Source: Iphione sp. A-MEVVRFRX5
Taxonomy: Eukaryota
Reading direction: 5' to 3'
NCBI GenBank assembly: GCA_976226885.1
Contig: OZ320322.1
Location: 47,988,001-48,052,000 of the forward strand
Length of the DNA stretch: 64,000 nucleotides
Below are positions 1 to 64,000 of this stretch, one piece after another (within the stretch, counting starts at the first letter, position 1; every line of letters starts with the position of its first letter). The translations under genes were made by a program, and so were the position numbers. The notes under the pieces were generated by a model, which ran no database searches, was not told where the DNA came from, and was given only the letters and a program-made list of their open reading frames with translations.

Positions 1-1540
1 TTTTTTATTTTTCAAGCTATTGTTAGATTATGGGGTATACCTGACATAGATCTGTTTGTTTCTAGGAAAAACTTTAAAGTATCAGTTAGTATATGCTAAC
101 TGGTTTCCAGATCCACAGTCAACTTATGGTAATGCTTTTTCTGTGGATTGGTTTTACCTCAATAGCCTCAGAGAGCTTGGTACAGCAGAGCTATCCAGAT
201 GGCGTGTCAACCTTTTCTACTATTTAGTTTAGGACCATACAACTTTCTGAATTACAGAAACAAGTCGACCATGGGGGTTATGGTAATTATGGTTCTTCTC
301 TTTTGAAGGCTTCATTAGAAGGGAAGGGTCTCACTAAGTCAATGAAGTAGGTTATACTAGAATCTTGGAGGGATAAAACCAGGGTGTTGTATGAATCCTA
401 CTAAAAAGATGGAATACCTTGTGTTTCTTTAAAAAGTGGGACCTTTTGAATCCCAGCCTGCCTTAAGCCGTCTAGTTTTTAATTAACTTTTATGATAAAG
501 GGGGTTCGCTATAGTGCCTTGAATACTGTTCGTAGTGCGCTTTCGGTTGTTTTTCTAAATTTTGATGGAATTGCGTTTGGAAAGCATCCTCATACCAATC
601 GACTTCTTTCGGGGTTTTTCAATTTAAGATTCCCTGTTGTTCGTATAAATTATGTGTGGGATGTCTCTAAAGTCTTAAATTATCTCAGGATTTGGACTCC
701 TAATTATTCTCTTTCACTTAAGCTTTTGTTTTATAAGTGCTTACCTCTGCTATTGCTGGTATCCTGTGGACGTCTACAGACTATTCATGCTATAAAACTT
801 TCTAACATTCATTACCTAGCTGACGAGTCAGTTCAAATTAACTATACTACTACATCTAAGCATTCTCGTGAAGGCAAGCCTGCCTCCTCTATATATCTAT
901 AATCCTTTACTAAACATTCTTCAATTTGTGTCTTAAAGTGTCTTAAGGTTTACGTATCAAAAACCTTTTCTTTAAGAGCGGGTATTAAAAACTTCTTTAT
1001 TTCATTAAAACCTCCATATGTGTCTGTAACTACTAATACTATGTCTCGTTGGACTAAAAATACCTTGTCTATGGCTGGAGTGGATGTATCAAAGTTCTCA
1101 GCACATTCAACCAGGTTTGCATCTGTTTCTAAGCTGGCAAAAATGGGTGTCCTCATAAATGAAATAATGAAAAGGGGTATGTGGTCCCATGCTAGCACGT
1201 TTCGGATCTTCTATTTAAAGGAAGTCCAATAAGGTGTGTTATCTTTACTGTTTATGGCATATTGTACAGTGTTTCTTCATTCAAGCCATATTTTTCTTTT
1301 AAAATCTTAGGTGTTGTCCTGTAGAAGGCTTGTTGTGAGTTAAAATTCATAGGGAATTCAAACTTATCTTAAGTGTCTTTTCTTCAGGAACACTGTATTT
1401 CAAGCCTGAGGTCTGTGGCCAGATCACGTGTGCAGCTCCATCTCAGATGCAGTGTTCTGAGGGTTTATTACGGTTTAAAAATTGCGGTTATTCTGCATTT
1501 AAGGTAAGTTTGATTTCTCTATGAATTAGGAGACTTATGA
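1..1540 (+). mobile_element. DIRS1-type tyrosine-recombinase retrotransposon, decayed 3' part (methyltransferase-like domain, YR integrase, right end)
   Basis: Frameshifted FQAIVRLWGIPDIDLFVSRKNFKV..YANWFPDPQSTYGNAFSVDW near 10-150 matches the DIRS MT-like domain. VILESWRDKTRVLYESY..RWNTLC near 350-430 and ORFs 492-902 and 1020-1232 (SALNTVRSALS, WDVSKVL, AHSTR..S..A, W...STF..FY) are DIRS YR motifs. The right boundary is approximate. Confidence 0.88.
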
Positions 1541-4500
1541 CATATTGTTCACCACCTACGTACGTAGTTGTCAGACTCATAACAGATTGTTCATCTATGT
1601 GCAATAGTTTCTCAGTTATGACAGTTTTTCTCTTTACCCACCTTTTGACTAGGTGACCTGTTGCTGCCTCTATCATCTGCGTCATTTGGTCGGCAGCATT
1701 TTGTTCATCACCTACATAGTTGATCAATAGATTGATAACATATCGCTAACTAGCTACGTACTCAGTAATCAACAGATGTATAACACATTTAAAATATTCT
1801 TTATATGAGTATTACTAAAACGATTCAAAAATCTTTTGTTACCACTTGTATGACAGAGAGAAAGAAAATGAAGTCTCGTGTTATAAATGGTTGATGGAGA
1901 TGTAGGATAACTAGTATAGGTAGAGTGAATGCAGTTTTAATGTTGTTTACTTTACTCATGAACAACTGATTATTAAATGGATTGTTTGCAATGGCGCTAT
2001 CTGTGTATTTATGACATGAGATATGAGTGTGTAATAGTATTACAAAATCAATGTCATACTTTACTGGGAAATGACAGAGAAATTCGTGTAATCGAAACAA
2101 ATCTCTTTCTCTTCATTCAGAGTGTATTTTTTTTGGTTTTTGCTTGTAGCATGTCAACGATGTGGCGTTGAATTAGTTCGAGTCCGAGGATTCGTTGATT
2201 GAAATTTTGGATTTGATGGAGCGCTTGATCCTACTCAGCGTGACCTTGCTTTCTGCCACTTGTTATCAAGACGACGAAAGTACGGTGGAGGACATATGCG
2301 ATAAGTGATATTTTGTTCTGGAACAAGAAGTAAGCCGTAAGTCTTCAAGATGTTATGTCTTCAACATTTGGTCCTTTGAGGGTTTTTTTTCCAAATTAGG
2401 AATTGTTTATTTTATACTGTGGAAGTTCATTCGATGTAGTTGGTGCATTGTCTATACTTGATCTGTGAATAGATCTTCGTAGTCTCAAATACTATTTAGA
2501 AATCAATTTCATTTGGATGTTAAGTTATTTTTTAATGTGAGTTTCGATGTATTTGTATCTTTATATTAAAATTTTTTAAAATACTTATTGTTTAATGATC
2601 ACGTTTTGCCTGCAACGCTAAGGATGTTACTGTGAATGTCTTTTGGATGGTGTTTCAGGTGAGAAGATTGAAAAGCTGCAAGACTTTTGGGTTTTTTTCA
2701 TTAACGTGCGTATCGAGGTGAAGGTAATGTATTCGACTAGCATGAAGTGGATGACGGATACATCCGAGCTGGTCGAGTACTATTGAATCAACATGGAGTT
2801 CAGTACCGAGAGTGATTACATTGAAGTTGTTTACTGTAGTAAGTATGGCTTTTCGAAGCGATGCTACCAGTTTTCGATCATCACTCATTAGATAAGACTT
2901 TTCCAAGCGACACTATTAGTCTCTGGTCGTTACTCATCAGATACTAGGCACTGGCGCTCCGAAAAGGAAGCATCTCATTCAGGGAGGAACCTCTCATTCA
3001 GGGAGAAGGGTGCCAATTGTTACTGGTGGGAGGCATTTTAGTGCAGAGGACATTTTGGGAGCTAGGGTTATTCAAGGATGAGAAGTAGGATTGGGCCGTG
3101 GGAGTTAGGGTTATTCAAGGATGAGAAGTAGGATTGGGCCGTGGGAGAGGGGGGTATATTGGATTTGACACCTTTGGAGAAGGCACCGCTTCATTTAACG
3201 TTCATTTTCCTTTTTGTTTTTTCCAATGAGAATTTTTAATTGTATGATTTTTCTTTTATATTTAAGTTGGAAGCATTTACGAACTATAGTAAAGAGTGAA
3301 CGTTTTTTTAGTACTTCAATATCTACGGTTTTCGCGAAGCAAACTTTGTAGTGCTTTGGGCAAAGTATTTAGCAGTTATCTGTTATAATTACGTATATAC
3401 AATTTGTGTAAATGTATGCATATGTAATCTCTCGTATTTATGTATATGTATATACATATGTACATGAACACATATGTACGTATAAAATGTTCATATAAAG
3501 CAATTGTATTTATACATTTATATGTGTTTTATATATATGGCTGGAGTGGATGTATCAAAGTTCTCAGCACATTCAATCAGGTCTGCATCTGTTTCTAAGC
3601 TGGCAAAAATGGGTGCCTTCATAAATGAAATAATGAAAAGGGGTATGTGGTTCCATGCTAGCACGTTTTATATCTTCTATTTAAAGGAAGTCCAATAAGG
3701 TGTGTTATCTTTGCTGTTTATGGTATATTGTACAGTGTTTCTTCATTCAAGCCATATTTCTCTTTTAAAATCTTAGGTGTTGCCCTGTAGAAGGTTTGTT
3801 ATGAGTTAAAATTCATAGGGAATTCAAACTTACCTTAAGTGTCTTTTCTTCAAGAACACTGTATTTCAAGTCTGAGGTCTATGGCTAGATCACGTGTGCA
3901 GCTCCATCTCAGATGCAGCGTTCTGAGGGTTTATTACGCTTTAAAAATTGCGGTTATTTTGCACTTAAGGTAAGTTTGATTTCTCTATGAATTAGGAGAC
4001 TTATGACATATTGTTCACCACCTACGTATGTAGTTGTCAGACTCATAACAGATTGTTCATCACCTACATAGTTAATCAATAGATTGATAACATATCGCTA
4101 ACTAGCTACGTATTCAGTAATCAACAGATGTATAACATATTCTTTATATGAGTATTACTAAAACGATCCAAAAATCTTTTGTTACCACTTGTATGATAGA
4201 GAAAAAGAAAATGAAGTCTCATGTCACAAATGGTTGATGGAAATGTAGGATAACTAGTGTAGGCAGAGTGAATGTAGTTTTAATATTGTAACGATTGGAG
4301 AAGTCGAGTTAAATTATATTATCTACAGTTCTCTCNNNNNNNNNNNNNNNNNNNNNNNNNNNNNNNNNNNNNNNNNNNNNNNNNNNNNNNNNNNNNNNNN
4401 NNNNNNNNNNNNNNNNNNNNNNNNNNNNNNNNNNNNNNNNNNNNNNNNNNNNNNNNNNNNNNNNNNNNNNNNNNNNNNNNNNNNNNNNNNNNNNNNNNNN

Positions 4501-6155
4501 NNNNNNNNNNNNNNNNNNNNNNNNNNNNNNNNNNNNNNNAACATTCATATGTATGCTGGGTAATAAATGGCTGTGATAAACGAGATGTGAATTTTTTGGT
4601 TTTGGGGGTATTGGTTGCTAAGGGATGATCTATGTTGGTTTACTTTACTCATGGACAACTGATTACTGAATGGGTTGTTTGCAATGGCGCTATCTGTGTA
4701 TTTATGACATGAGACATGAGTGTGTAATAGTATCACAAAATCAATGTCACACTTTACTGGGAAATTCTTGTAATCGAAACAAATCTCTTTCTCTTCATTC
4801 AAAGTGTATTTTTTGGGGCTTCTGCTTGTAGCATGTCAACGATGTGGCGTTGAATTAGTTCGAGTTCGAGGATTCGTTGACTGAAATTTTGGATCTGATG
4901 GAGCGCTTGATCCTATCCAGCGTGACCTTGCTTTCTGCCACTTGTTATTAAGACGACGAGAGTACGGTGGAAGATATACGCGATAAGTGATATTTTGTTC
5001 TGGAATAAGAAGTAAGCCGTAAGTCTTCAAGATGTCATGTCTTCAACATTTGGCCCTTTGAGGGTTTTTTTCCAAATTAGGAACTGTTTATATTATATTG
5101 TGGAAGCTCATTCGATATAGTTGGTGCATTGTCCATACTTGATCTGTGAATAGATCTTCGTAGTCTCAAATATTATTTAGAAATCAATTTCATTTGGATG
5201 TTAAGTTATTTTTTAATGTGAGTTTCGATGTATTTGTATCTTTATATTAAAATTTTTTAAAAATACTTATTGTTTAATGATCACGTTTTGCCTGCAACGC
5301 TAAGGGTGTTACTGTGAATGTCTTTTGGATGGTGTTTCAGGTGAGAAGATTGAAAAGCTGCAAGACTTTTTGGTTTTTTTCCTTAACGTGCGTACCGAGG
5401 TGGAGGTAATGTATTCGACTAGCGTGAAGTGGATGACGGTTACATCTGAGTTGGTCGAGTGCTACTGAATCAACATGGAGCTCAGTACCGAGAGTGGTTA
5501 CATTGAAGTTGTTTACTGTAGCAAGTATGGCTTTTCGAAGCGATGCTACCAGTTTTCGGTCATCACTCATCAGATAAGACTTCTCCAAGCGACACTATTA
5601 GTTTCTGGTCATTACTTATCAGATACTGGGCACTGGTGCTTCGAAAAGGAAGCATCTCATTCAGGGAGGAGGGTGCCAATTGTTACTGGTGGGAGGCGTT
5701 TTAGTGTAGAAGACATTTTGGGAGCTAGGGTTATTTAAGGATGAGAAGTAGGATTGGGTCATGGGAGAGGGGGGTATATTGGATTTGACACCTTTGGAGA
5801 AGGCACCGCTTCACTTAACGTTCATTTTCTTTTCTGTCTTTTTCAATGAGGATTTTTAATTGTATAATTTTTCGTTTATACTTAAGTTGGAAGCATTTAC
5901 GAACTATAGTAAAGAGTGAACGTTTTTTTTAGTACTTCAATATTTACGGTTTTCGCGAAGCAAACTTTGTAGTGCTTTGGGTAAAGTATTTAGCAGTTAT
6001 TTGTTATAATTACGTATATACAATTTGTGTAAATATATGCATATGTAATTTCTCGTATTTATGTATATGTATATACATATGTACATGGACACATATGTAT
6101 GTATAAAATGTTCATATAAAGCAATTGTGTTTATACATTTATATGTGTTTTATAT
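1071..6155. repeat. ~2.5 kb tandem duplication (1071-3536 and 3537-~6155), second copy spans the N gap
   Basis: atggctggagtggatgtatc restarts at 3537, and near-identical ORFs recur (2655-2906 vs 5337-5588; 1020-1232 vs 3504-3698). Confidence 0.92.
4336..4539. other. Assembly gap (run of N)
   Basis: 204 consecutive N. Confidence 1.
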
Positions 6156-6879
6156 GTATGTGTATATGTATATATACAGATGTATATATATGTAGTCACT
6201 GTGACGTCACGTGTATCTGTGCGCACATAAATAAACTGATGATATACAATATCATTAGATTATTGAGTCCCACAACGTATATTCGTATGTTTGGAGGAAG
6301 TTTAGAAATTACTACAAATAGGTTACTAGATCCGAACTGTATTGCTCAAAGGTCATCATCGAAAGGGCGTTGATGGTTTTAATTCTGGAGGTTCAGTGGA
6401 AGCTGCCCGTTGATAATTTGAAAAGAGTCTGTTTCTTTTTTGTAAAAGTTAAATACACGTACGTATCGAAGGCAGTTACAGAGAGGCGACATGGAGTTCT
6501 GCTTCTGTGCATCTGACGGACAAATCTATGATACGCCCTTTTTTTCCCCACGGTTTTGATCATTTTGTGGGTATATGTCCTTGTTAGATCTGCATTGTTC
6601 TGAGATGTAACTTTAGCACCAGTAGGTGAGTGTGTGTAAGTTTAGATATGACGCTGCTATTTGTATTAAATCGTAAACACCTGTGTGTACATCTTGATAT
6701 AAAGTGATGATTACATTTCGCTGCAAAATAGTGATATTGATGCTATCCTAGAAGATATCTATGAGACAAGATTCATTAATAAATTTTGTCATCTAGACAT
6801 AGTATGGTTCGCGTTATGCAGGTTATTGGATGAATATTATGAGAATTATTCAAACAACAAAATCATTTTGCTGCTATTA

Positions 6880-7310
6880 ACGATTTGATTTTTTTTACGA
6901 TAGTTGGCTGGATATTGTATGAAGGGTTGAGTTTGGGGAAGGGGTATCGATTTGCTATGAAAGCTGCAGTTGACTTTCTGATCTTTTCTACAACTGTTGG
7001 CTAGATGTTGCATAAAGAGGTGAGGTGAGGGAAGGAGTATTAGTTTGCTATGAGAGGTGCCATTGACGATTTGATCTTTGCTAAGACAGTTGGTTTGATG
7101 TTGTATGAAGGGTTGAAGTTGGGGAAGGGGTATCAGTCTGCTATGAGAGCTGTTATTGACGACGTAACCTTTCTTAAAATAGTTGGTTTGATGTTGCATA
7201 AAGAGTTGAGGTTGGGGAAGGAGTATCGGTTTGGTATGAGAGTTGTCATTGACAACTTGAGTTTTGCTAAAACAGTTCGCTTGATGTTATATGCAGAGTT
7301 GAGGTGAGGG
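6880..7310. repeat. 93-bp minisatellite, ~5 diverged copies
   Basis: gttggYTRgatRttgYat recurs at about 6904, 6997, 7090, 7182 and 7276, giving 31-aa periodic ORFs on both strands. Confidence 0.85.
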
Positions 7311-8339
7311 AGTTACATATAGACTAATTGTCAGTATACGACAGATTGAAGTCATGTATAGATTAGTTCTCAGTATTCAATGGTTGGAAAGTAGTCACAT
7401 GTAAACTAGCTCTTAGTACGCAGTAGATTGAAATCACATGTAGCGTTGGATGTGACACATAGGCCAGCTGGTAGTACTTAGTAGGTTGAACTCATATGTA
7501 GATCAGGTTTTGCCGACTGGTCATCTATTATTAGTAATCACACAAAATGCATAATATTCCAGTGTTTATGTTTTATTTCGTTTGCACTGTGGTGTTACAT
7601 AAGAACTAGTCATGGAAAGATTTAAAATATTGTATATGTCAGTTGGAGAGGTGTCCTGCTTTCTATATCATTTTTTTCTAATCCTCTTTTGTGTATATTC
7701 TCATGTACATGTGTATATGTATGTATTAAAGGACTATTACTATCAATACCTTTCTGTTTGTGTACAGTTGTTTAGGGTGGAGGAGTCATGGGTTTATATT
7801 CTATGTACAAAGGTAATACAGATAAGACTTGAATACATTTTTCCTCTTCTCACATATACTTTATTGGTTTGTAAAAGGGTGATCATTTGTACTGTGTTCA
7901 CTTTGAACTTAATCACATATAGAGGAGATCGATTTTCAAGCGGGTTGTATATGTATTTGTATTTGGCTTGGCGTGTATGATGTTTATGTGATTGGCGTAG
8001 GGGTTAGGGAGGGGGGGGGGGGAGATACCTATAGTTTATTTATTTGTTTTCGGGTGTATTAAGTAGTACCAGCGAACTGTAAAATATACGAATAAACGTT
8101 GTTATTAAGATATTGTAGAATGTTGTGTATCATTAAATAGACAATGGGTTCAAATATAGATGAACCCAATAACGACCCACAATCAACGATCAAAATGGCA
8201 GTCTATATTTTACAGTATGGCCGGTGTTTAAAATGGTGGTGTTTCCGTATGGCTGCGAGCTCGACCGGATATATTGAGAGATCATTTCGATCATATCGAG
8301 GTGATCACTTTGAATATTAAATTGTTTGCTTACCATTCA

Positions 8340-9250
8340 CAGTGATATTAGTATAGGTGTCAATTGTTTTTGATAGAATAGTAAGGAAAGCATTATGCGT
8401 ACATATATTGTATAATTTAGTAGAGTCTAGTATATTATGGTAATATCAGTATAGATGTTATCTGTTCTTGATAGCAAGCAGGGCGTTTTTGGTATATGTA
8501 CTATACCATTTAGTGCAATGAGAGACATTTACAGTAATACTAGTATAGATGTTATCTGTTTATGATGGTAAGCAAGGCATTATTCGTGTACGTATTGTAT
8601 AGTTTAATAGAATTTTTTTCAATTCTTTACTAAAATATTTATCTATAAATATAGGTCGCGTGACCCCATGGAAGATGGACCTATTGAGTGATAGTAATAG
8701 TCAACATTTTGAGAAGAAGTGGCGATAAAAGTGCTGATCAATTTATAGTGAGGAGGAGTCAGGTATATTTACAGTGATATTAGTATAGATGCTATTTATG
8801 CTTGATAGTAAGCAAAATACATTTACAGTGACAGTAGTACAAATGTCGTCTGCTATTGATAGCAAGTATAGTGTGGTACAGCGAGGTAATTTACAATGAC
8901 TAGTATAGATGTCATTTGTATCTGAAAGTAAAGAAGGTATTATTTGTACATATATTGTGTAGCGTGGTTGAGTCTGGTATATTGATAGTGATACTAGTAT
9001 AGGTGTCATCTGATTTTGATAGGAAGAAAGGTGTTAACTGTACATGTATCGTAGACTAGTATAGGTGGTATTTTTGGTTCGATAGTAAATAAGGCGTTGC
9101 TTGTGTATGCATTGTATTACTTAGTACAATGAGGAATATTTACAGTGATATCAGTCCAGATGTCATTTGTTTTTGATAGTAAGCAAAGCGTTATTTGTGC
9201 ATGCATTGTATAGTTCAGTAGAGTCAGATACATTGACAGTGATTGTGTGT
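8340..9250. repeat. Degenerate ~90-bp tandem repeat array
   Basis: Recurrent agtgatattagtatagatgttatctgtt...tgatagYaagcaa motif. Confidence 0.75.
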
Positions 9251-10095
9251 TCTCGTTTCAATTATTTACTAACGTATCTGTCTATTAATACAGGTTGCCT
9301 GAATCTATGGAAGATGAATTTGTTGAGTTATAGTAGCAGTCAACATTTTTGGAGGAGGTGGTGGTAGAGGTGTTTATCAGTTTATAAGAAGGAGGAGTGT
9401 CCATCCAAACTGAAATTCCTTGTAAGTATTACATCAGTTTGTTTTATGGTCTTGAATGTGGGATAGTATGTTATACAAAAAAATTATATAGTTTGATGAA
9501 TAGTTTATGAAATGTTTCGTTATCAGATAGAATGATTTCTGTGTATATTCCCTTGACTATGTAGACTAAGGAGATGTATTCATTAGTTCTGGATATTAAG
9601 AGTTGGCGTTGGACGTGAAATTAGAATTGATGGTTTCTCTTCAATTTTTGGCTGCCGTTTTCTTTCTGTGCTAGGTAAACGTCTCTGATAGGCGAATTTC
9701 GACTGTGTGTAGAAGACAGTTGGATGGTCTCTTTCTTATATATCATTTTTAATATAATCTTTCTCAATTGGTGAAGCGTCTCTTGCAGAGATGGAGTAAA
9801 TGAATCCAAGAGATGACACGAGTGATGAAACCAGAGTCAAAGATTACATATTATGATACAAGATCATTTAGTTTTAAGGTCGAAGTGTAGGGTTAGAGCT
9901 TTAGTAACTTGCAAACTTAATGGATGTTACACAGGTATACCTCTCTTAATAAGATAGATATATTTTTTGATGTTATGTCGTGCCAACAATGTCTCATATC
10001 ATTATTCATTTGTTCTAAAAGAGAGATATGTTGGTGTTGTTTCTCTTTCCAAAATATGAAGGAGGGAGTATATCTTACAATCTCTATTACTATAG

Positions 10096-11751: not shown

Positions 11752-13699
11752 GTTTTCATTTAGAATTCTCCTCATACACCTTTTTTTTAAACAGTAAAGT
11801 AGTATCACAGTTACATATAGAGTGAAGGTAAATGTTTTATGTTGAGAGCTTTTATTTTAACTTTGGTACATGACTGATAGTTTGTTAGTGAGTAATGTTG
11901 TTTTTATGACATCTATTACCAAACTAAGCTATAAAGGTGGGTAGACTGCTTACGACTGGATCCACTTGAAAGTGTTATTTTGACCTCTTTGCTAGGTGTT
12001 TCCTATCTAATTTGACTTGTATCGCATAGGTTTTCTAATGATATGGCTAGAATGAGTTGTTGGAGTACTTTGGTGCTGTTGTGGGTATAACTTTGTATTG
12101 GTGGTCACAGGTGATTCTAGATAGTCCTTCTAATTAGCGTGTATTAGTTATATTTTACTTTGCATGTACTACTATTCGTATACTGTTATGTGTTATGTGC
12201 AATAAAAACTCATAAAATGACATTTTAGTTATATGGTATTTTATATGAATAAATAGTGGAATGAATAGTAGTAGTGGCAGTGAATAGTAGTAGTGGCAGT
12301 AGCAATAGTAGTAATGAAAGATATTTTAAATCAAGTGTTGTATTGTAGTAATTTGAAGTGTGATTTTGGGTGGTGAATCTGTGCAAAATATATTTGAATA
12401 ACAATTAGAAATGTGCTATTTTAGCTATAGTATATATTTCTCTGAATGGAATGCCTTTTAATTGCTTCAGCTTTGATGTCAAGTATGAGATAGGATGAAG
12501 AAATCAAGATCAATTTTGTTGGTTGGGTTCATTTTGCGAAGAATATTATAGGATTCAAGTTAAGTTGTAATAAATTAGGTGTAGAAAAGTATATAGTAAA
12601 GATGAATATCTTATGTTAGTGTAAATAATTTAAAAACCATGGGAATTATTGTGGATAGTAACTTGTGTGTTGTTAATATAAGTATTCTAAAGTGGCCTTT
12701 CCTTGGAGATCTTTTGTAGGATTATAGAAAAATATTTTGATCTTTGAGCTTGGGATGATCTTAGGATTTTTGGGCTGATTTCAGAGGTATTGTATTGAAG
12801 TTGAGGCAGTTCGAAGTATCGCTTTTATTGTATACATAGAATTGTAATTGACGAAAATCGTGGTGGTGGTGGTAGTAGTATGTACATATAAGGAAATATT
12901 TTTGAAAAGGTCTCGATGCTAAAATCAATATGATTTATTCGTTTAAATTAATATAACAAATATATAAAAACGTTGAATGCTATTTTCTATCGAATTTTTA
13001 TGCTTTATACAGTTATGTTTCATCCTTTAATTTTGATTATGTTTTGTGTATTTTGTGAAAGTATTAGAATCAAAATTCTATTAATAATAGTTTACGTTGA
13101 ACATATACTGGAATTTGATGGAGAAAACTAAGCATTGGAAGCTTACTCTAGAGAAGGAAATTTCTAAAAATGACGTTTTTGTGTGTTCATAATTGTATAT
13201 ATTAATAAGTGTATTGTGTAAACAATGTATCTAAGAGCTTTTACAAGAAGTTGTCGCAGAGTAAATTCTATATTGATGTAACTACATACGATACTATAAT
13301 TGTTGCCTTCGGTTATCAGGAGGTGTTTCGAAAAGAAACCAGACAATGAACGCCGCGCTTCCGCAGAGCATTGTATTACCTCGAGTTTCTTTACTATTAC
13401 ATTGATAGATTTAGGTGTTGGATTAGTGGTTTAGTTGGCACTGGCCCAGTGTTTATCTGCTATTAGATATTAGGTTTCAGTTTGAAAAAAATTGAATCGG
13501 ATATCATTGACGTCAAGGATCAGATGAGATTTAAGATCACTTATTTAGAGAGATGTGTTAACAGAAGGTTATATATGTATGGTATGATTGTAGTGCGCAT
13601 TTGATTACAAAACACCAGATTTGTAAGGAGAGAAGGATATGTGTACGCGTGAGAGAGAGATAGAGAGAAAGAAATAGTTTTCATACTACGCAAAAGAAG

Positions 13700-46330: not shown

Positions 46331-46439
46331 CTCATTCCTCTTGTACTGACCATTGTTGAGCTATAGAAATGTGATAGGTTTTTATCTTAAACAAGGCAAT
46401 CCCCTCCAATGCATGTATATACTTGCATGAGAGATGCAG

Positions 46440-54599: not shown

Positions 54600-56650
54600 G
54601 ATCTCGTAAGCTTTGTCAAGAGAAAATAGTTTATAAGAGGAGAGTTTAAGTCTAAAGGTTGTGACAACGGTTGATCACGGTGGGGGGGGACAATAAAAAA
54701 GGCCTACATAGAGAGGTTTTCGATGTAGATTGTTTATCCTTACTCGCATGGCTGCTATTGCCGAGGTTATTATGTACACAACCACTTCTCCAAAAATTTT
54801 TACATGGGTCTAGAGGTTTGCATTCCACATATTGGGAGGGTGCACTGTCACCCTTACTCTTCTGCATGGTTGCACCGGGGCTCAGAGATTGATTCAAACC
54901 CTTCGCCACGTTTTCACACTATCTATTAGCAACGTTATGACAAGAACTATATCATACGCCATCTATGTTACCCCACCTTAAATCTTGGTTACATGCTTTA
55001 CAGTTACTTTGGTACTCAATTTAGACTCAATATGATAGTCAAGGAATTTTAGAGTCGGTTTGTGTTGCAATGGATCGCCATTAAGGACCAGATCAAGCGG
55101 TATGCCACTGGCCTTACCTACTATAGTGTAGAAACATTTGCCTTCGCTAAGGATGAAGTTATTGTTCCTGCACCAGTTACTTACTCTTTCGATCGTCAAC
55201 ATAGTGACACCCCTCAGCTTCAGTAGATCATTGGCGAAAGTCAGAAGCGTAAGGTCGTCAGCGTAAAGCATCGTCTCGATATCTTTAGGCACAACTCCCA
55301 TGACGTTATCCATGATACAAATAAACGCACTGGGACCCCAGACACTGCCCTGGGGAACTCCCTGTCGCAGAGGGAGTACTTCCGAGCGTTCATCCCTACA
55401 CTCCACATATTGACTCCTTTCCTCAAAGTAGTTCTGCACCATAGTCCTAGTCTTTGGCCCCACCCCTTTGATAGCAAGCGACCTTAGCACACTTTCATGG
55501 GGTACGAGGTCAAATGTTTTCTTAAGATCGAAAAACAACTAGACAGGTGTAAAGTCTCTGGTTGAGCCGATTACAAAGCGAATTCATCAACCTACAGTAA
55601 GCAGTCGTTGTTCTTCTGTTCTTCCGGAAGCCATGCTGAGCGTCACTCAACTGGTTAGTTACCTCAATGTGGTTCATTATTGATATTGTGGACCAAGTTT
55701 CGCACAGCTTCCCGGAGAGGGGTAGGATGGACACAGAACGGTAATTCTCCAGCACATCCGTGTCCCCCTTTTTGTGCACTGGAGTGATTCGAGCCACTTT
55801 CCAGGCAGTAGGGAAGCGTCCCTCGGATAGTATCTGATGGAAGAGTTAGGGGACATAATCGGGAACTCTTAACAACAGTGGCTTGAGAATCCTAGTGGGG
55901 ACACCTGAGATATCCGAAGATTTAGTCACGGTAACCTTGAAGATCAATCTGGCAATGCAAGCTGGTGTTGGGGCACTTATTTCAAAGTTATTGTTATCTA
56001 AGCTTCCTCTTACAAATGTAGTCCCCACGTCAACCGGCCCAGTTCCAATGGTTGACAATGCCTCCACCTCAGTACAGAAGAAGGTGTTAAAGGCTATAGC
56101 TAGGTTTGTACCATTCCCATTGTTGGCACTATCCCAGTCTGGGAGCGCTGGTTCAAGCCTGTCGCGACATAACATTGTATTTAGGACTTTCCATTTATTC
56201 GCCTGATCATGTCCAGCACTCTCCAGCTTACCTTGCCAGAAGGCACGCTTCTCCATTTTGATGGCATGCTTTACCCTATTAGACAAGAATTTGAAGATAT
56301 TGAAGCTATCTTCACACACGGTTCGCCTCCACTTTCTGTAGAAGTAGTCGCGATCCCGACCTAGGTCAACGGTTCCAGCAGACAGGGAGAAACCATCAGA
56401 GTTATGTTTATGCTTGGAAGTTATCACTGGATATTGTTCAGCTATCTGCCTTTCAATTTGCAAGATCAGGTTTGACTAGGCTGTTTCATAATCATCAGTC
56501 TTGTCAAGGTGGTTACCCTCATGGAGAGTGTCCACAAGGGCATCTATGTCTAGGTTGCTCCACCGTCTAAATGTTACCGTTTCAGTTAGTACATGGTTTA
56601 CTCTTAATTGGTGGAAGAAAAAGTAACAAAAGGCGCATGAAGTTTACTTA
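54600..56650 (-). mobile_element. L2/CR1-like LINE ORF2, copy 2
   Basis: Duplicate of 49800-51850. Confidence 0.93.
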
Positions 56651-57949
56651 GTTTTCTAAAAAAGTCAAAGTTTGACATGTGGCTATAACGTTTCATAATT
56701 GTGAAAACTTATAAAGAATTGCCAAATCAAATTAATTATGTTTGAGTGGTACAAAGAAGGATAAGCATGCTATAAACTAAAACGAAAAATACAGCCAGGC
56801 AATAATAGACGAGAGATACGAGGGATTGAAATAAATTTACATTTATCAAAGGAGAGAGATCAACTAAAGAGGTATACGTTTATTTTTTGCATAGAATTCT
56901 TATCCACAATCCGATAAGTCAGAAGATTTGCCCAGAAACATGGTCCAATGGAAACGTTCTGCAGTTCTCGATTGTTTCTTTTCAGATTTTCCTTTTCTGA
57001 TTTTGAAAGTGGACGTTTGTTTTTTTGGAGGTGTCGATTCCATGGGATTCTGAATTAAAACACATTTTCTAAATAGTAGTAGATATAGAAGTAGTCTTGG
57101 AACTATTTTCTATTCAATCAAATAACACGTTTCTTGAAAATAAATTGTTATAAGGAATTTATTACAGTCAGTCAGACATAGATCATTTAGGTGTTCACGT
57201 CTAGGCAGTATATTTATGTGATCAACTTTATCTTAAAATCTGAATTCAGTTATCTATTAGTAGACAGAATATGGAAGAATATATTGAGATTAAGTCATAC
57301 TCCATATTAATTTCAGTAAAGTGCATGTAGTACTAATGCATTAAAATAACAGGTCATTTAAATCAATTATAGGGGAGTAATGATATTATATTTGGTAATG
57401 CAATATGGCACAATAGAGCTGTAAAATTAATTGATATTTAAAGTCACAGTCATATTTAGAATCACACAGTGTTTTATAGTAAATTGTTGTTGATATTTTA
57501 AAAATCCAAAGGTTATAGAATTAATCTAGTGGATGTCTTGGGAGATGACAAGTATTGTCAGTTCCATAGAAATAAGTTTTCCTGAAATATGTACAGGAGT
57601 ACATTTTAAAAGGGATTTATTTTTTCCCTGCAAAAACCTATTTGTTCGGGGACGGTGGATGAAACCTATTTTTTCAATTTTCTCCTGTTTTCCCACCCTG
57701 TTTTTCCAGTTGTTTTCACTTGTTTTTCTTCTCACCTTTATATTTCTTAATAAGAGTCTCCGTCATCCAGAGTGGTGGAGAGGTGTGTGTATGTGTTGGG
57801 GGGGGGGGAGGGGGGGGGGGGGGGGATCAGTTATCGTGAGTGAGATCTTAGCTGTCCAGAGATACCCACGCACATCCTTGGCTTCTGAAGCAGCTGACCC
57901 CAATGGGCATGTGGTTTCCCCCTCCTTCCTAACTAAAGCCACCAATAGC

Positions 57950-59200
57950 ATCCAGTAAGGAGACGCGATTGGCAAGTATTTCAGCCCTCTATATAGTGAA
58001 AATCTGTCCACCATTGAAGCAACTCTATAAGATGGTTCACTCGTTAGAAAAATATAATCAACCCTTCTTATTCAAATTCATTTTCTTGTAAAATAGTTTA
58101 GCTAAGATGCTTCTGTGGTTTTTTTAATTCAATTGGTTCCTGTAAAATGGATCTGGATATCAAGAAATATCTACACTAAGTGTTTGATTAATGGCAGCCA
58201 ATATAACCTGCAAATTTTAATTCAGTTAGCCTTCTTCTTGATCGCATATTTTTTGGGAGAACATATCTTCGTGGAACTACTGTTTGTAGCGACAACATTG
58301 CAGTATTTTCATATACCAGTCATCCGACCCACTGCAGTTACAGTAGATCTGTTTCTCATTTGTGCGGTGATGACTGTCCCATATCAGTTTATTCAACTGG
58401 AAAAGGTTAAATTAGTCTACAGTGTGATATACTGACAACCAATGTAATACAAAAACAGTATCAGAATACTAGTTCTGTCGTTTCCTAATGAAAGTTGCCC
58501 TAACAAACCGAAATAGTTTAACTTATGAAATCATGTCGATTTCTTAAAGACTCTCTGACTAAGGTCACCTGGTTTGGATATGGGGAATAAAATACTCATA
58601 GCAAATGTCACTTAATAATTTAACATGATTTACCGTTAGTAGGCAATATAGATGCGAGTGAATAGTGTGAAGCTATTTACATCGTATGGTAAACGTTGCT
58701 TCATGGCGTGGAAGGCTTGCGCTGCAATTAAATCAGGCAATATTAAAAATGAAGCAGATAACTCTGGAGCGGAACACTAAACATGTAAAGAGTTGTTACT
58801 TGTGAATGACACATGTTAGAAGAATGAATTGCGATGTGATCACAAGTACGATTTGAGACGAAAGTACTGCCAGCATACATCGAATTCGTGCCGATTTCTC
58901 TCATTAGACAGAATCGAGAACCTTATACTAGTTTCCTTTTCTACTATCACAACCACTATCAATTTTTTTCTATTCATTGTTTTTTCTATTACAATAGTTG
59001 TTTGGGTGGTTCAGAACACTGTTGTCACTACTACTATCGTGTGTTTCAAAATGTATATATGATTTCATGCAAGCAAGCAGAACGTTGAATGTTATTAATT
59101 TTTCGTTTCTGATATTTACTACATCCATATATATAACATTCTTGAAACGAAAAAACATGATAGCTTCAGCATGAACATAAATAATCTGTAGTTTTGTTAC
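57950..59200 (-). pseudogene. Pcl: Polycomblike (PHF1/MTF2/PHF19, Drosophila Pcl) pseudogene, intron-containing: Tudor-like, PHD1 remnant, PHD2, EH/winged-helix remnant
   Basis: Exon 58681-58721 reads [19 protein letters not shown] and splices in phase 0 to ttttccAG|[43 protein letters not shown] (58396 downward). This matches PCL as recalled: [52 protein letters not shown]. Weaker remnants: RFKNVIYMDVV..SYIHFETHDSS (Tudor-like), IVL-CD-x9-CH (PHD1), RVNHLIELL..GLKYLP (EH). Confidence 0.85.
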
Positions 59201-59647
59201 AATATATTGATATGTAACAACTAAGAATTGGTATTAAATCAACATACCGACTTTGCAGATGAAATTAGCCGCGAGGATATATTTCTCCTTTTCTTTTTGT
59301 AAGCTGTATGTATATATAATATTTATGTATATTAATGTATACGTATACGTATAGATATTTATGTAAATCAATGGATTTTCGTGTGTAGTAAATCAGTGGA
59401 AATGTATACAACTCTCTTTGTTTTTCATCGAAATAGCATTCTTGAGAGCTGTGCAATCCCAAATGAATTTTCTCATATAAGTTTTAATCACCAATAGGAT
59501 TGGTAGTCAAAGATGAACACCTATTTTAACATTGATTGAGAACTGAATTTATAAATTCGTTTGTAGCATTTGTAGCTATGAACATATCATACTGAGGCGA
59601 TTATGAAAATTTTTCCTCTACCTATTCATTTATATCGTCATACTTAC

Positions 59648-61540
59648 AGGTGAAATTGTATGTATATATGTAGCAAATATATAATAAAAATTGGTTAACA
59701 AAACGTCTTCTTTTAGTATACAAGACTCTATCAGCTTGTTGCTGTAGATATCGCTGTTTTCGTGTTGATCTAATAGTTCTCTAAAGTAATCAAAGGTTTT
59801 GGATATTTTTACATGTGAGGTTGTAAGGATAAGAGGAGATTTAGGACTAGACAAATGTTCAGATACTTGTTCATTGTTTAAATGGTGACTTATGAAGTTA
59901 GTATTGTGTTGCATCTTGTCTAGAGCAGGCTTTGAGAGGCTATTTCCTACAACATCCTCTGAGCTTCTGTCATTTAGCTCTAAATTTTCCTTAGGATGCT
60001 CAACACTATAATCGTCCAGATATATCAGATCCACTTGTGTGGTATGTGAATTTGTCACAGCTGACTAGTGACTGAGAGCAATTATAAGTGGTTGGTGACT
60101 GATGGCAGTCACAATTGGCTGGTTACAGATAGGAATCACAGTTGGCATGTGACAGATGGCAGTCACAGCTGTTCAGTGATAGGTAGCAGTTGAAAAATTT
60201 GAATCACTTATAATTTTGTGTTTTGATGCTCTTTTCACAGCTTCTGAAGTCTGAAGAAGCTTCTTAGGCCGACATTCAGCATTACTCTGGTTAAGTTTCT
60301 ATAGAGTTGTGTTTTTTAGCTTTCTGTTTTCACGTTTATATATATTAGGTAACTCAGGACTGTTCGAATGGCCAGTTATTTCTTTCTGTAATTTCTGAAG
60401 TACAGCTATTCGCTTGATAGCTTCCACAATATTTGGGGAAGATGTAGAATGGTATCTTCGCTTTGCCTGTTTTCCCCGGGATGACGGTAGAGTAGAGACT
60501 GGAGCATTTCTTTTCAGTGAAGACTGCTTCTTCAACTGAGAAGTCTGTCTAACAGTGGTATAATGCAGTTCCTTTATCTTAAGAGTATCTATTTGTATTT
60601 TCAGTGTCTTTGCTCACTGTAGGTGTATGATGACAATCAAAATGAAGAGAGACATTTGTTTGTAATAGACATATATTTGCTGGTGGATTAAAAACATCAT
60701 TACATATCAAATCAACTAGGATGTAGTAGTTAGACGTCTTAGGGGCGGGTAGATTACAAACAGTAGCCGCTGCAGTCTTAATACGTTCTTATATTGGTGT
60801 ATTTATGGCTACTTTTGTTGGTATTTCTACTGTTCTGAAAGGTTTATGTAATGCCTAGTTTTTGCCGATAGAACATCTACTATTCATGGGAGACCTTTCT
60901 TAGTTCTTGTACGGGATTCTTCTGTTTTGATTTACACTATTACGAATGGGACTTTGCTTGGTTGTTTGAAAGCTAGAATTGTTCATACTGTATGAAAGGG
61001 ATTCTCGTGATATTTCATATGCAGGTGTTACTTTACGATTCTTTGAATTATGTGAAAAAGATACAGTATTGTCCACAGGCTTGGGATGATTGTCATGAGG
61101 TGATGTCAGCGATGCAACAGGAGAAGTTCTTTTGAGTGATGACAATGTCTTTATTAGCGACTTTTCAAAAGAAGAAATATTTCTCTTGACTTATTTAGTG
61201 CTTCCTGGATTTATTGTTCTTACTTTTTTAGAGGTTTCAATGATACTTGGTTGTTGCCTGTTGACATTACGTTTGTGTGATGTTTTTTCAGATATCTACT
61301 ATTTCTAAAGATTGCTGTAACGATTTGTCGTTTAATGCACATTCACTGCTTTTTTGATAAGGCTTTACCTGTAGATTTCTTTGAATTCTCTGGTTCTCAT
61401 CGTCGCCAACATAAAAGGGATGCGGGTCAAGATAGTGCGTATATCTCATATACATAGAAATAGATCCCACATCACGTGGCAGGGAAGTGCGCGCACAACG
61501 TGCTATGCCACTTGGTGTGAATGAAAGGTTCACATACATG
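59648..61540 (-). pseudogene. Decayed long S/T/K/N/P-rich exon ending at a canonical donor, with an internal 27-bp (9-aa) repeat at 60050-60190
   Basis: ORFs 60299-60535 and 59630-60058 share a frame; the exon ends ATTTCACCT|GTAAGT at 59648; repeat TVTAICHQP-like occurs about five times. Confidence 0.55.
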
Positions 61541-62282
61541 AAGATAGTACTTTAAAAGTATATGTCCCGATTACAAACATATGTCTCTATTTTATTCTTT
61601 TCTTTAGTCCAGCATTTTCTCCTTCGCTTTGATCTGTGACAAGTCTCTTTCTATCCCTCTTTGATCTATCGAGACAAATACGAGACAAATTGTTGACGAT
61701 GTTCGTTTCTTTATTGAGAGTATATCGAGTTTTATAGGGAAGAAGAACTAAAATTTTCTTCTGTGTGTTTTTGGTGATTGTTACCTTTAATGTCTCTTCA
61801 TTGCAATAAGGTTTTATTGATATTTTTTTATTGAATTTCAATAAAAGACCATTGAAAAAATATGAAACATATCATCTGCAACGCACAGTTGGTTTAAGAT
61901 GTCCATTCATCCCCACGAAACATCACAGATACTAGGAGAGAATACAATGGTATAGCTGACATATGATTCCCCCTACCCTCTGACAACCCCCAAGCTTTAG
62001 GTATTAGAATGAGAGGGGATGAAGAAAGTATTTGTGTGCATTGCTATGTCTTTTTGAAAATTAAGCGAAACGTCATGTAAAAATCAGTGAAAGCAGTTCA
62101 ATTCATGCAAAAAAATCACTAGATATGAAAATAGGTGCCATCAAAAGAAACCTTCGCTTTGTGTACGTTCCACTCAAAAAAAATAATTGATTGAATCGAG
62201 CAAAATATTGGTTAATTGTAACTAATTGTAATGGTCTTTGCAATTAACTTCAGCGTAAAAACGGAATTACTGGTTGATTGTC

Positions 62283-62640: not shown

Positions 62641-64000
62641 AGCATCTTTTTCCTTGTCTGCAGTCTCTGGTGTTTCCTGGTGATTTGTGTCGAAACCACC
62701 AACTCTATCCTGGTCACGGCACCAAACGCATCTGTTACACAGTTGACACAAACGCAGATTTTACCAAGTTCTTGTTTTATTTTATTCAGTATAACATGAC
62801 AGGTTTTCTCTCTACTTTCTCTCTAGGTAATCTGCCTCCACCTCCTGGACTCTGTCCTCTTTCTCTCTGCCCGGTGCTTAGCGCGCATCTCCCTACTGGA
62901 AGCTCACTATATAGTGGCTGTTCTGACGTCAATGGTCATCCTATCATTATCCACTTAATCCATTGATGTCAGGCGCGCTCTTCATATAATTTTAATCCTA
63001 TGAGTTGATAATCCTAAGTGGTTAGTCACATGATCGTCGTAGATCATGTTAAGTGTGTTTGAAAGGCTATGTAAATAGGAAGGGAGTTAGAGGAGACTGA
63101 GTCTACATGTATTTAGACTCCTATCCTGCCTTCCTCTTCCCTTCATCTTATTTCAACGTTTTTCTATGCATACATACTACATTGTTATCTGGCTTGGGAT
63201 CCTTCTTGGAGACTAGACGTCTTGCGCCACTACCGGATGTGATAGACCAACTCTTTCTTATGGCTGAAGATTCACTGGCATCATTGATCACAAACTATTA
63301 GAAGTGATATGTGCCAAGCTCATCGCAGCTGCCCCACCTAAGCTATAAAGGATGTTGTTGTGTATCCAGGTGTATGACTGTACCATCTAATACCACTCTG
63401 GGGATCAGATGATCATATCGAACATTCTCTTTCGACTCCCTAATTCGAAGGAGGTAAAGTCAGTGTAATTGGATGTCCGAATTGATAATTTAAAACTGAA
63501 TGTCTTCAATTTCAGTTTAGAGAAGCAATGATAGCTGTGAACAAAGACGAAACGATGTCCAACCCTCAATATGGTGAAAAAACATTAAATACCTGCCAAT
63601 AACATTGACGTCATACCGGTCAAAAAGACAAGGATGTTGGCCCGTGATACTATATATTCGTCAAATATAAATGAGAATATCAAAAAGATGGTCAAAAAAA
63701 TGTCGTTTGTACTAAAAAGAGCAAGATACCAATAGAAAAGAATCACTTCTATCAACACAGGTGTCACACGCCCCATGAAAACTGCTGGGCACTGACTTCT
63801 TTAAAATTAACAGCGGTTTGTGAGTCATAGGATTTCGCAACCTATCATTTCCGTACGCTGTGTAGTTTGTCTTTTAGAATATATTGCCTTGGAAACTGAC
63901 TTACCACGTAAAACCTCTAATAGATGAATAGGAAGCAGGTTGCTGACAGAGGAGAACTACTGAGTAGGTCTACTAGGAGGTGTGCCGCAACCAGCCGTAA

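What the first reader, a model, noticed from the sequence alone, without database searches (positions are those of the whole stretch)
1..64000. Duplicated DNA diverges almost only by C:G to T:A transitions, mostly outside CpG (RIP-like or deaminase-like signature in an animal)
Seen: comparing the two 4.8-kb copies by eye gave 15 substitutions outside the poly-G tract, all transitions (e.g. 49184 A/G, 49206 A/G, 49309 T/C, 49808 G/A, 49821 G/A, 50474 C/T, 50795 T/C, 51034 T/C, 51100 A/G, 51856 T/C, 51956 A/G). Only one (49206) is in CpG; the others are CpA, CpC or CpT contexts. Six of seven sites polarisable with older paralogs (38-40 kb) go GC to AT. The Penelope triplicate, the 78-, 59- and 51-bp duplications and the 21.6-kb LINE fragment show the same near-exclusive transition pattern. 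Established: animal genomes usually show ts/tv near 2 with CpG-focused decay; RIP (fungal, RID/DIM-2) and AID/APOBEC deaminases cause non-CpG C>T. Inference: a repeat- or heterochromatin-targeted cytosine modification or deamination system may act in this germline.
Basis: partly seen in the sequence, partly recalled or inferred. Interest (0 to 1): 0.85.

Follow-up and report, generated by a model that had tools for sequence, protein, structure and literature searches.

The report
Transition-only decay of duplicated DNA
Duplicated DNA in this transposon-rich window of a probable animal differs almost only by C/T and G/A changes in every sequence context, about twice as often at C on one strand, and this looks more like an unusual local or genome-wide mutation spectrum than a fungal-style defence that targets repeats.

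Summary
All 15 listed differences between the two 4.8-kb copies are transitions. Thirteen non-redundant paralog pairs give 419 transitions to 45 transversions. The same script gave 34:20 and 36:34 on LINE pairs from other eukaryotic contigs.

The changes show no CpG, CpA, TpC/CpC or dipyrimidine preference. They are spread Poisson-like, show no strand-coordinated runs, and are balanced between the two copies. Duplications of 43-78 bp show the same pattern (7:0).

Polarised sites favour GC>AT (32 against 13 AT>GC, 6 transversions). AT>GC transitions still exceed what mis-polarisation predicts.

C on the + strand differs twice as often as C on the - strand. The whole window carries a matching G+T excess, including DNA without an in-window copy.

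RIP and APOBEC-type retroelement editing each fail defining features. The best reading is slow, context-free, strand-asymmetric damage of deamination type, tied to replication or transcription direction and not shown to be triggered by repeats. Heterochromatin-wide targeting cannot be excluded from one window. The organism was not identified.

The parts
48817..53616 (.). First copy of the 4.8-kb tandem duplication. It holds a LINE fragment on the - strand and a private, perfect 112-bp tandem duplication at 52055-52278.
   Evidence: 15 transitions, 0 transversions and one poly-G indel against the second copy.
53617..58302 (.). Second copy of the 4.8-kb tandem duplication.
38928..40672 (-). Older paralog of the LINE fragment. 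A 313-aa ORF at 39301-40242 has a weak RVT_1 match.
   Evidence: 114 ts to 7 tv against 55149-56900 and 116:7 against 50349-52100. The amino-acid differences look neutral.
37604..38927 (-). Block I of ~600-bp tandem units next to the LINE fragment.
   Evidence: 33:2 against block II. The units differ from each other by 96:4 and 75:5 at 82-83% identity.
41668..42672 (-). Block II of the same ~600-bp units, 94.5% identical to 37901-38927.
40674..41668 (-). Continuation of the LINE fragment, with a paralog at 60303-61304.
   Evidence: 45 ts to 5 tv.
60303..61304 (-). Paralog of 40674-41668.
1070..3539 (.). First copy of a ~2.5-kb tandem duplication.
   Evidence: 22:2, 13:0 and 70:8 in three aligned pieces.
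3536..6160 (.). Second copy of that duplication. It is interrupted by a 342-bp insert (4290-4631) that contains the N gap at 4336-4539.
   Evidence: the sequence on either side of the insert is collinear with bases 1946/1947 of the first copy.
43607..44235 (.). Copy c1 of a three-copy ~0.6-kb repeat. The other copies are c2 at 46933-47560 and c3 at 47931-48546.
   Evidence: c1/c3 41:9; c2 against c1 89:19. Used for polarisation.
32581..34546 (+). Triplicated ~640-687-bp unit with an RT-like ORF.
   Evidence: 5 transitions, 0 transversions and one 48-bp indel.
21631..21837 (-). Inverted 207-bp fragment of the same LINE family (paralogs at 49977-50183 and 54777-54983).
   Evidence: 10 ts, 0 tv. 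C/T-type and A/G-type differences are 5:5, as expected for an inverted pair under an in-place strand bias.
14076..14231 (.). 78-bp x2 tandem duplication. Similar short duplications lie at 30912-31029 (59 bp), 18526-18626 (51 bp) and 3056-3147 (43 bp).
   Evidence: together 7 transitions and 0 transversions.
22900..25500 (+). Purine-rich 28/56-bp satellite with 246/302-bp higher-order units, poor in C on the + strand. Old unit comparisons give ts/tv of about 2.
   Evidence: Majority-rule rates per site: G>A 0.186, A>G 0.064, T>C 0.084.
6870..7305 (.). 93-bp x4.7 tandem array. It is the clearest low-ratio outlier (57 ts to 27 tv, ungapped).
1..62000 (+). Continuous G+T (keto) excess on the + strand. 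It is positive in all 32 windows of 2 kb and near zero (0.003-0.009) only at 50-52 kb and in the last one, 62-64 kb.
   Evidence: G 13801 against C 9568, and T 21924 against A 18503. In DNA without an in-window copy, GC skew is 0.207, TA skew is 0.097, G-C = 2442 and T-A = 2102.

Best explanation
The duplicated segments diverged slowly and in place, under a point-mutation spectrum made almost entirely of context-independent transitions.

Most of these are C:G>T:A. A smaller real share is T:A>C:G. C on the + strand is hit about twice as often as C on the - strand.

I infer that the cause is damage of deamination type on transiently single-stranded DNA that is poorly repaired. Cytosine to uracil is the simplest candidate. 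The strand bias would then be set by a constant direction of replication or transcription across at least 60 kb.

The process needs no homology sensing. Duplicates only make it visible, because they start out identical. I also infer that the DNA here is not CpG-methylated in the germline, since CpG is not hypermutable.

Shown:
- the spectrum
- its lack of sequence context
- its even spacing along the copies
- its strand asymmetry
- the matching base-composition skew of the whole window

Inferred:
- the chemistry (deamination)
- the repair weakness
- the link to replication or transcription
- that single-copy DNA elsewhere in the genome behaves the same way
For: - Ratio: ts:tv is 419:45 in non-redundant pairs, and 20:0, 122:9 and 330:26 in the three identity bins above 90%. 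Controls give 1-2.
- Flat context: CpA 0.075, CpC 0.092, CpG 0.073, CpT 0.084; the 5' neighbour ranges 0.066-0.100.
- Even spacing: variance/mean is about 1 in most pairs (0.2-2.8), and runs-test z values lie between -0.7 and +1.2.
- Balance between copies: C>T 37 against T>C 35, and G>A 20 against A>G 22.
- Kinds of repeat: tandem DNA-level duplicates, dispersed LINE copies and 43-109-bp duplicates all share the bias.
- Strand asymmetry: 278/2497 + strand C sites differ against 167/2976 - strand C sites (chi2 54.7, p 1.4e-13). The direction is the same in most pairs from 1 kb to 61 kb (ratios above 1 in 9 of 13).
- Composition: the G+T excess is at least as strong in DNA with no in-window copy as in duplicated DNA. 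G-C is about equal to T-A and purines are about 50%, as transitions alone would produce. The skew is weakest in the youngest elements.
- Equilibrium: + strand C/(C+T) of about 0.25 in the old 10-32 kb part (composition) agrees with 0.23 predicted from the polarised rates.
Against: - No single-copy neutral DNA could be compared, so genome-wide action is an inference.
- ts/tv is not homogeneous. The 93-bp array (57:27) and the old satellite units (about 2:1) differ from the 600-bp units (96:4) at a similar transition load.
- T>C on the + strand (10) exceeds A>G (3). This is not what deamination of an exposed + strand predicts.
- Only 51 changes could be polarised, with outgroups 7.5-30% diverged.
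- To my knowledge, such a high nuclear ts/tv has not been reported for an animal. That leaves room for a dedicated enzyme.
- No gene or replication origin was found that would fix the direction.
Confidence: 0.5

Rival explanations
1. A germline system targeted at repeats or heterochromatin deaminates cytosine, or modifies it in all contexts so that it then deaminates. This is the first reader's idea in its broad form: RIP-like in effect but without a sequence motif.
For: - The ts/tv ratio is extreme.
- Polarised changes are mostly GC>AT, 32 against 13.
- Long repeats (96:4) have far higher ratios than old short-unit arrays (57:27; about 2:1) at a similar transition load. That fits extra transitions being added to long repeats.
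- The window is almost entirely transposon-derived, so even its in-window unique DNA may be repeated elsewhere in the genome.
Against: - No context preference, no clustering and no strand-coordinated runs.
- CpA is over-represented (1.17), and (CpA+TpG)/(ApC+GpT) is 1.12.
- The best possible substrate, a 4.8-kb tandem duplicate, differs by only 0.3%.
- Duplicates of 43-109 bp show the same bias.
- AT>GC transitions number 13 against 4.2 expected from mis-polarisation, and they outnumber the transversions.
- The strand bias follows window coordinates.
Confidence: 0.2
2. A recent change of repair capacity in this lineage. Candidates are loss or weakening of uracil excision (UNG/SMUG1), of MSH6-type base-mismatch repair, or of O6-alkylguanine repair. 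Young divergence would then be transition-only, while older repeats would still carry an earlier, ordinary spectrum. This overlaps with the best explanation and adds a time axis.
For: - ts/tv falls with age: 20:0, 13.6, 12.7, 5.3, 4.7, 1.9 across the identity bins.
- The old arrays carry many transversions.
- CpG o/e is 0.67 with CA/TG excess, yet CpG is not hypermutable in the pairs. This suggests a past regime of CpG decay.
- Transitions in both directions fit unrepaired G.T mispairs.
Against: - The 600-bp units at 82-83% identity still show 96:4, so age alone does not order the ratios.
- Indels are rare (20 events against several hundred substitutions), and only about six are single-base changes in short mononucleotide runs. 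Full mismatch-repair loss is therefore unlikely.
- Low-identity satellite alignments are less reliable.
- No repair gene could be checked.
Confidence: 0.15
3. Editing of retroelement intermediates during retrotransposition, by APOBEC-like deamination of cDNA or ADAR-like editing of RNA.
For: The LINE families lie on the - strand. The excess of + strand C/T differences would correspond to G>A on the LINE sense strand.
Against: - Tandem DNA-level duplicates show the same pattern (105:10, 15:0, 7:0).
- Changes are balanced between copies and are of both strand types, interleaved.
- There is no motif.
- PMC4866542 describes clustered, strand-biased, motif-specific G>A as the footprint, and found none above noise in 19 invertebrate genomes.
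Confidence: 0.03
4. An artefact: mis-assembled haplotypes or residual sequencing or damage errors posing as paralog divergence.
For: - The scaffold contains a gap inside one duplicate.
- The 99.7% pair could in principle be two haplotypes laid in tandem.
Against: - Divergence of 5-17% with clean, mostly ungapped alignments is far above any consensus error rate.
- The duplication junctions are sharp.
- The base-composition skew of the whole window tells the same story independently.
- Even if the pair were haplotypes, the differences would still be natural variants that are all transitions.
Confidence: 0.05

Closest known systems
Repeat-induced point mutation (RIP) of Neurospora and other fungi
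   Same: Duplicated DNA diverges almost only by transitions, mostly GC>AT, in both copies.
   Different: There is no target dinucleotide, whereas RIP uses CpA in Neurospora and TpCpG in Pucciniomycotina (PMC3318451). CpA is not depleted. There is no burst on a fresh long tandem duplicate and no length threshold. AT>GC transitions are present. The strand bias is tied to chromosomal position. The host appears to be an animal.
AID/APOBEC editing footprints in vertebrate retroelements
   Same: Non-CpG C>T/G>A changes occur in retroelement copies. AID/APOBEC-like deaminases are known from several invertebrate lineages (PMC5889660, abstract listed).
   Different: There are no clusters, no motif and no single edited copy. 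Non-retrotransposed tandem duplicates are affected as well.
Strand-biased spontaneous cytosine deamination at replication forks or on the non-transcribed strand, as in uracil-repair-deficient bacteria and in bacterial and mitochondrial G+T skew (from my own knowledge, not read here)
   Same: C>T is context-free and transitions dominate. The bias between strands is two- to several-fold. The more exposed strand builds up a G+T excess.
   Different: This is a transposon-rich nuclear region of an apparent animal. The skew (GC skew 0.2-0.4 over tens of kb) is several times the intron or replication-domain skews that I recall for mammals. T>C is raised on the same strand as C>T.
Transcription-associated mutational asymmetry of mammalian genes (from my own knowledge)
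   Same: The bias runs one way over tens of kb, with G+T excess on one strand and unequal rates of complementary transitions.
   Different: The magnitude is greater. ts/tv is about 10 rather than about 2. There is no CpG effect, and no gene was identified in the window.

Membership tests
RIP (fungal repeat-induced point mutation) | C>T concentrated at a specific di- or trinucleotide target, with that target depleted | tested here: not met
   CpA 0.075, CpC 0.092, CpG 0.073, CpT 0.084. CpA o/e is 1.17 and (CpA+TpG)/(ApC+GpT) is 1.12.
RIP (fungal repeat-induced point mutation) | Changes are exclusively C>T / G>A | tested here: inconclusive
   32 GC>AT against 13 AT>GC. About 4.2 AT>GC would be expected from mis-polarisation alone. 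The sample is small.
RIP (fungal repeat-induced point mutation) | Dependence on homology and length (about 400 bp or more and over 80% identity in Neurospora), with heavy mutation of fresh linked duplicates | tested here: not met
   Duplicates of 43-78 bp give 7:0, and 60-109-bp fragments give about 5-10:1. The 4.8-kb tandem pair is only 0.3% diverged.
RIP (fungal repeat-induced point mutation) | RID/DIM-2-type cytosine methyltransferase machinery in the genome | not testable with these tools
   Only this window was available, and the organism was not identified.
APOBEC-type retroelement DNA editing | Clusters of G>A on the element's coding strand, concentrated in one copy of a pair | tested here: not met
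   Runs-test z is about 0 and variance/mean is about 1. Counts are balanced between copies, 37/35 and 20/22.
APOBEC-type retroelement DNA editing | A sequence motif around the edited base | tested here: not met
   The trinucleotide table is flat.
APOBEC-type retroelement DNA editing | Restricted to elements that pass through reverse transcription | tested here: not met
   Tandem DNA duplications of 43 bp to 4.8 kb show the same spectrum.
5-methyl-CpG deamination decay | Transitions concentrated at CpG | tested here: not met
   46/629 CpG-context C sites differ (0.073), against 0.075-0.092 in the other contexts.
Mismatch-repair-deficiency spectrum | Transitions in both directions, together with abundant 1-bp indels in mononucleotide runs | tested here: not met
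   Both transition directions are seen. There are only 20 indel events against several hundred substitutions, and about six are single-base changes in short runs.
UV signature | C>T limited to dipyrimidines, with CC>TT doublets | tested here: not met
   C flanked by purines on both sides differs at 0.079, against 0.068 for dipyrimidine C. Adjacent double changes number 21 against 24.4 expected by chance.
Replication- or transcription-linked strand-asymmetric mutation | Complementary changes occur at unequal rates, in the same direction over a long stretch whatever the element | tested here: met
   + strand C 11.1% against - strand C 5.6%, p 1.4e-13. The ratio is above 1 in 9 of 13 pairs spread from 1 to 61 kb. 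The inverted pair gives 5:5.
Replication- or transcription-linked strand-asymmetric mutation | A matching base-composition skew in all resident DNA, growing with residence time | tested here: met
   The G+T excess is positive in all 32 windows of 2 kb and weakest in the youngest elements. It is present in DNA without an in-window copy.
Replication- or transcription-linked strand-asymmetric mutation | The sign of the skew follows gene orientation or flips at replication origins | not testable with these tools
   No host gene was recognised, and there are no flanking data.

The most novel reading that the evidence does not exclude
An animal germline has a dedicated system that deaminates, or modifies and then deaminates, cytosines across transposon-rich chromatin. 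The system has no sequence motif and prefers one DNA strand. Its effect would be like fungal RIP, but its mechanism would be unrelated.
Probability: 0.2. Interest if true: 0.85.

Novelty: new variant of a known kind. Interest (0 to 1): 0.6.

Why it matters
To my knowledge, no animal nuclear genome has been reported with a neutral ts/tv near 10-16, no CpG effect and a two-fold strand bias.

If the pattern is genome-wide, this lineage has an unusual balance of DNA damage and repair. That would distort molecular dating, Kimura-distance repeat landscapes, codon usage and base composition. It would also give a natural system for studying cytosine deamination and its repair in a germline.

If the pattern is confined to transposon-rich chromatin, it would be the first mutational genome defence of RIP-like effect seen outside fungi.

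In either case, the strand skew could be used to map replication or transcription direction in this genome.

Tried and rejected
**Identifying the organism.** All attempts failed.
- Three homolog searches gave at best 35-51% identity, or nothing for the 288-aa ORF, and the few named hits came from scattered animals.
- Ten exact ORF look-ups were absent from the collection.
- A metagenome scan found no relative.
- A full HMMER search with the integrase ORF gave at most 55% identity over most of the ORF (up to 61% over shorter stretches). The only named hit was a pipefish Gypsy-like protein.
- Cluster look-ups gave no species.
- Rfam and tRNA scans were empty.

**Cryptic old duplicates.** A search in a purine/pyrimidine alphabet for transition-saturated duplicates found only homopurine or homopyrimidine low-complexity matches.

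**Singleton variants in the 28-bp satellite.** Scoring these to obtain a recent spectrum is invalid. Transitions recur in every column, so rare variants are transversions by construction.

**Purifying selection as the source of the transition excess.** Rejected. About 25 of 205 residues differ between the LINE ORFs, which fits neutral decay.

**Signatures tested and rejected.** UV, CpG-methylation decay and full mismatch-repair loss.

**Literature.** Searches found no report of RIP-like or extreme transition bias in animal repeats.

**Handling of restricted material.** None of the fetched contigs (L001-L005) was taken for human. The N gap was not filled. No consensus of any virus-like element was built; a majority rule was applied only to a 28-bp satellite and a 93-bp array.

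Full report
**The window.** It is 64 kb long with 36.5% GC, CpG o/e 0.67 and one N gap at 4336-4539. Base counts are strongly unequal: T 21924, A 18503, G 13801, C 9568. Recognisable coding remnants are all transposon-like:
- reverse-transcriptase ORFs on the - strand at 39301-40242, 44211-44759, 50178-50738, 54978-55538 and 62283-62717
- an endonuclease ORF at 45706-46167
- an integrase ORF at 17579-18034 on the + strand

Named homologs come from animals, but identities are only 35-55%. The source is therefore probably an animal and remains unidentified. No RNA gene was found.

**The gap.** The gap lies in the second copy of a ~2.5-kb tandem duplication (1070-3539 and 3536-6160). In the first copy, bases 1946 and 1947 are adjacent. 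In the second copy their counterparts are 4289 and 4632. The 342 bp between them, gap included, are an insert relative to the first copy, and both ends carry ATRTTG. The two sides are therefore collinear with the paralog. The content of the gap is unknown and was left so. No alignment used below crosses it.

**The observation.** That pair has 15 substitutions, all transitions, only one of them in a CpG, plus a 2-bp indel at the end of a poly-G run.

Older pairs show the same pattern:

| Pair | ts:tv |
|---|---|
| 38928-40672 vs 55149-56900 | 114:7 |
| 1940-3539 vs 4632-6160 | 70:8 |
| 37901-38927 vs 41668-42672 | 33:2 |
| 40674-41668 vs 60303-61304 | 45:5 |
| 1070-1595 vs 3536-4061 | 22:2 |
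| inverted fragment 21631-21837 | 10:0 |
| triplicate 32581-34546 | 5:0 |

Tandem duplications with 43-78-bp units give 7:0. By identity bin the ratios are 20:0 (98% or more), 122:9 (94-98%) and 330:26 (90-94%). Thirteen non-redundant pairs give 419:45, with p = 6e-33 against a ratio of 2. As a control, the same script was run on LINE copies from unrelated eukaryotic contigs in public metagenome assemblies. It gave 34:20, 36:34 and 15:7. The method does not create the bias.

**Sequence context.** Treating each C/T or G/A difference as a change at C, the fraction of C-bearing sites that differ is 0.075 for CpA, 0.092 for CpC, 0.073 for CpG and 0.084 for CpT. For the 5' neighbour it is 0.085 (A), 0.066 (C), 0.100 (G) and 0.079 (T). 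This excludes several known processes:
- There is no CpG hypermutability.
- There is no CpA target as in Neurospora RIP, and no TpCpG target as in Pucciniomycotina (PMC3318451).
- There is no TpC or CpC preference of APOBEC type.
- C flanked by purines on both sides is as variable (0.079) as dipyrimidine C (0.068), and adjacent double changes are at chance level (21 against 24.4). UV is therefore excluded.
- CpA is over-represented in the window (1.17), and the RIP index (CpA+TpG)/(ApC+GpT) is 1.12.

**Spacing and distribution between copies.** Differences are spread evenly, with variance/mean near 1 in 50-bp bins for most pairs. C/T-type and A/G-type differences are interleaved at random, with runs-test z between -0.7 and +1.2. 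They are balanced between the two copies of a pair, for example C>T 37 against T>C 35 and G>A 20 against A>G 22. This is what slow, independent accumulation in both copies looks like. It is not what processive or one-sided hypermutation looks like. PMC4866542 takes clustered, strand-biased, motif-specific G>A as the footprint of APOBEC editing, and found none above noise in 19 invertebrate genomes.

**Direction of change.** Only three-copy situations can be polarised:
- the ~0.6-kb family at 43.6, 46.9 and 47.9 kb
- the 600-bp units at 37.6-38.9 and 41.7-42.7 kb
- the 4.8-kb pair, with 38928-40672 as outgroup

With strict column filters these give C>T 23, G>A 9, T>C 10, A>G 3, 6 transversions and 4 ambiguous sites. 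If change were irreversibly C>T, parallel hits in the outgroup would fake about 4.2 AT>GC events; 13 are seen. GC>AT is therefore about 3-5 times faster per site. AT>GC transitions also seem real, and they outnumber transversions at A:T sites. A majority-rule reading of the 28-bp satellite agrees: G>A 0.186, A>G 0.064 and T>C 0.084 per site. The sample is small, and this is the weakest link in the argument.

**Strand asymmetry.** Among the pairs, 278 of 2497 + strand C sites differ (11.1%), against 167 of 2976 - strand C sites (5.6%). The chi-square is 54.7 and p = 1.4e-13. The bias has the same sign in 9 of 13 pairs located from 1 kb to 61 kb; the exceptions are the youngest pairs, which have few differences, and one short pair. 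It is absent (5:5) in the one inverted pair, as an in-place bias predicts.

The base composition shows the same thing independently. The G+T excess on the + strand is positive in all 32 windows of 2 kb, at 0.003-0.224. Purines stay at about 50%. In DNA without any in-window copy the skew is at least as strong as in duplicated DNA: GC skew 0.207 against 0.155, TA skew 0.097 against 0.070, and G-C = 2442 against T-A = 2102. The skew is weakest in the youngest elements, the triplicate at 32-34 kb and the LINE copies at 38-40 and 50-52 kb. This fits accumulation with residence time. All ten G/C runs of 8 or more are poly-G on the + strand.

The transition-only, non-CpG, mostly GC>AT pattern stands. 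The inference of repeat-triggered machinery does not gain support:
- There is no motif, no clustering and no length threshold.
- There is no burst on the freshest long tandem duplicate.
- The strand bias is tied to position and is also written into non-duplicated sequence.

Retroelement cDNA editing is excluded as the main cause, because tandem DNA duplications behave like the LINE copies. Full mismatch-repair loss is unlikely. Only 20 indel events accompany several hundred substitutions, and about six of them are single-base changes in short mononucleotide runs. Purifying selection on the LINE ORF is not the cause either, since about 25 of 205 residues differ between the copies.

**Best explanation (confidence 0.5).** The cause is a local or genome-wide spectrum dominated by context-free transitions of deamination type. 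It acts more on the strand that is more often single-stranded during replication or transcription, in DNA that is not CpG-methylated and where the resulting mispairs are poorly repaired. Duplicates merely reveal it. From my own knowledge, the closest parallels are two: the strand-biased C>T of uracil-repair-deficient bacteria, and the G+T skew of bacterial leading strands and of mitochondrial DNA.

**What remains unexplained.**
- The ratio is not uniform. The 600-bp units show 96:4 at 83% identity. The ungapped 93-bp array shows 57:27 and old satellite units about 2:1, at a similar transition load. Three readings are possible: a recent change of regime, a different mutational behaviour of short-unit arrays, or extra transitions on long repeats.
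- CpG is depleted (0.67) although it is not hypermutable in the pairs.
- T>C is raised on the same strand as C>T.
- The window is nearly all transposon-derived, so targeting of transposon-rich chromatin as a whole (probability about 0.2) cannot be separated from a genome-wide spectrum without single-copy DNA from the same genome.

**Verdict.**
- Membership in RIP or in APOBEC-type editing is rejected on tested defining features.
- The phenomenon is an extreme variant of mutational bias and strand asymmetry.
- It is unusual enough to merit a genome-wide check.

Noticed in passing
window 8011-57825 (ten runs; longest 28865-28886): Every homopolymer run of 8 or more G/C is poly-G on the + strand (up to 22 G). 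There is no poly-C run.
   Followed up: partly
window 22900-25500: A purine-rich 28/56-bp satellite with 246/302-bp higher-order units holds only 141 C in 2451 nt on the + strand. Long stop-free ORFs on the - strand are probably a by-product of this composition.
   Followed up: partly
window 6846-7305: A 93-bp x4.7 tandem array is spanned by a 117-aa ORF on the - strand (a 31-residue repeat). Its units differ by many transversions, unlike the rest of the window.
   Followed up: partly
window 15164-16030 (+): An intact 288-aa ORF with a Cys/His-rich, RING-like C-terminus has no Pfam match and no homolog in the protein collection.
   Followed up: partly
window 37604-42672: The LINE fragment at 38928-41668 is bracketed by ~1-kb direct repeats made of ~600-bp units that carry ORFs on the - strand. 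These may be 5' monomers of the LINE, or two adjoining insertions.
   Followed up: no
window 52055-52278: A perfect 112-bp tandem duplication is present only in the first 4.8-kb copy, so it is younger than the 4.8-kb duplication.
   Followed up: no
window 4290-4631: The N gap lies inside a 342-bp insert that only the second 2.5-kb copy has. The insert is flanked on both sides by ATRTTG, which may be a target-site duplication.
   Followed up: partly
whole window: CpG o/e is 0.67 with CA and TG in excess, yet CpG sites are not more variable than other C sites between paralogs. This suggests past CpG decay that is no longer active.
   Followed up: partly
window 492-902 (+): By eye, a 136-aa ORF resembles the N-terminal domain of tyrosine-recombinase (DIRS/Crypton-like) elements. 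Pfam gave no match.
   Followed up: partly
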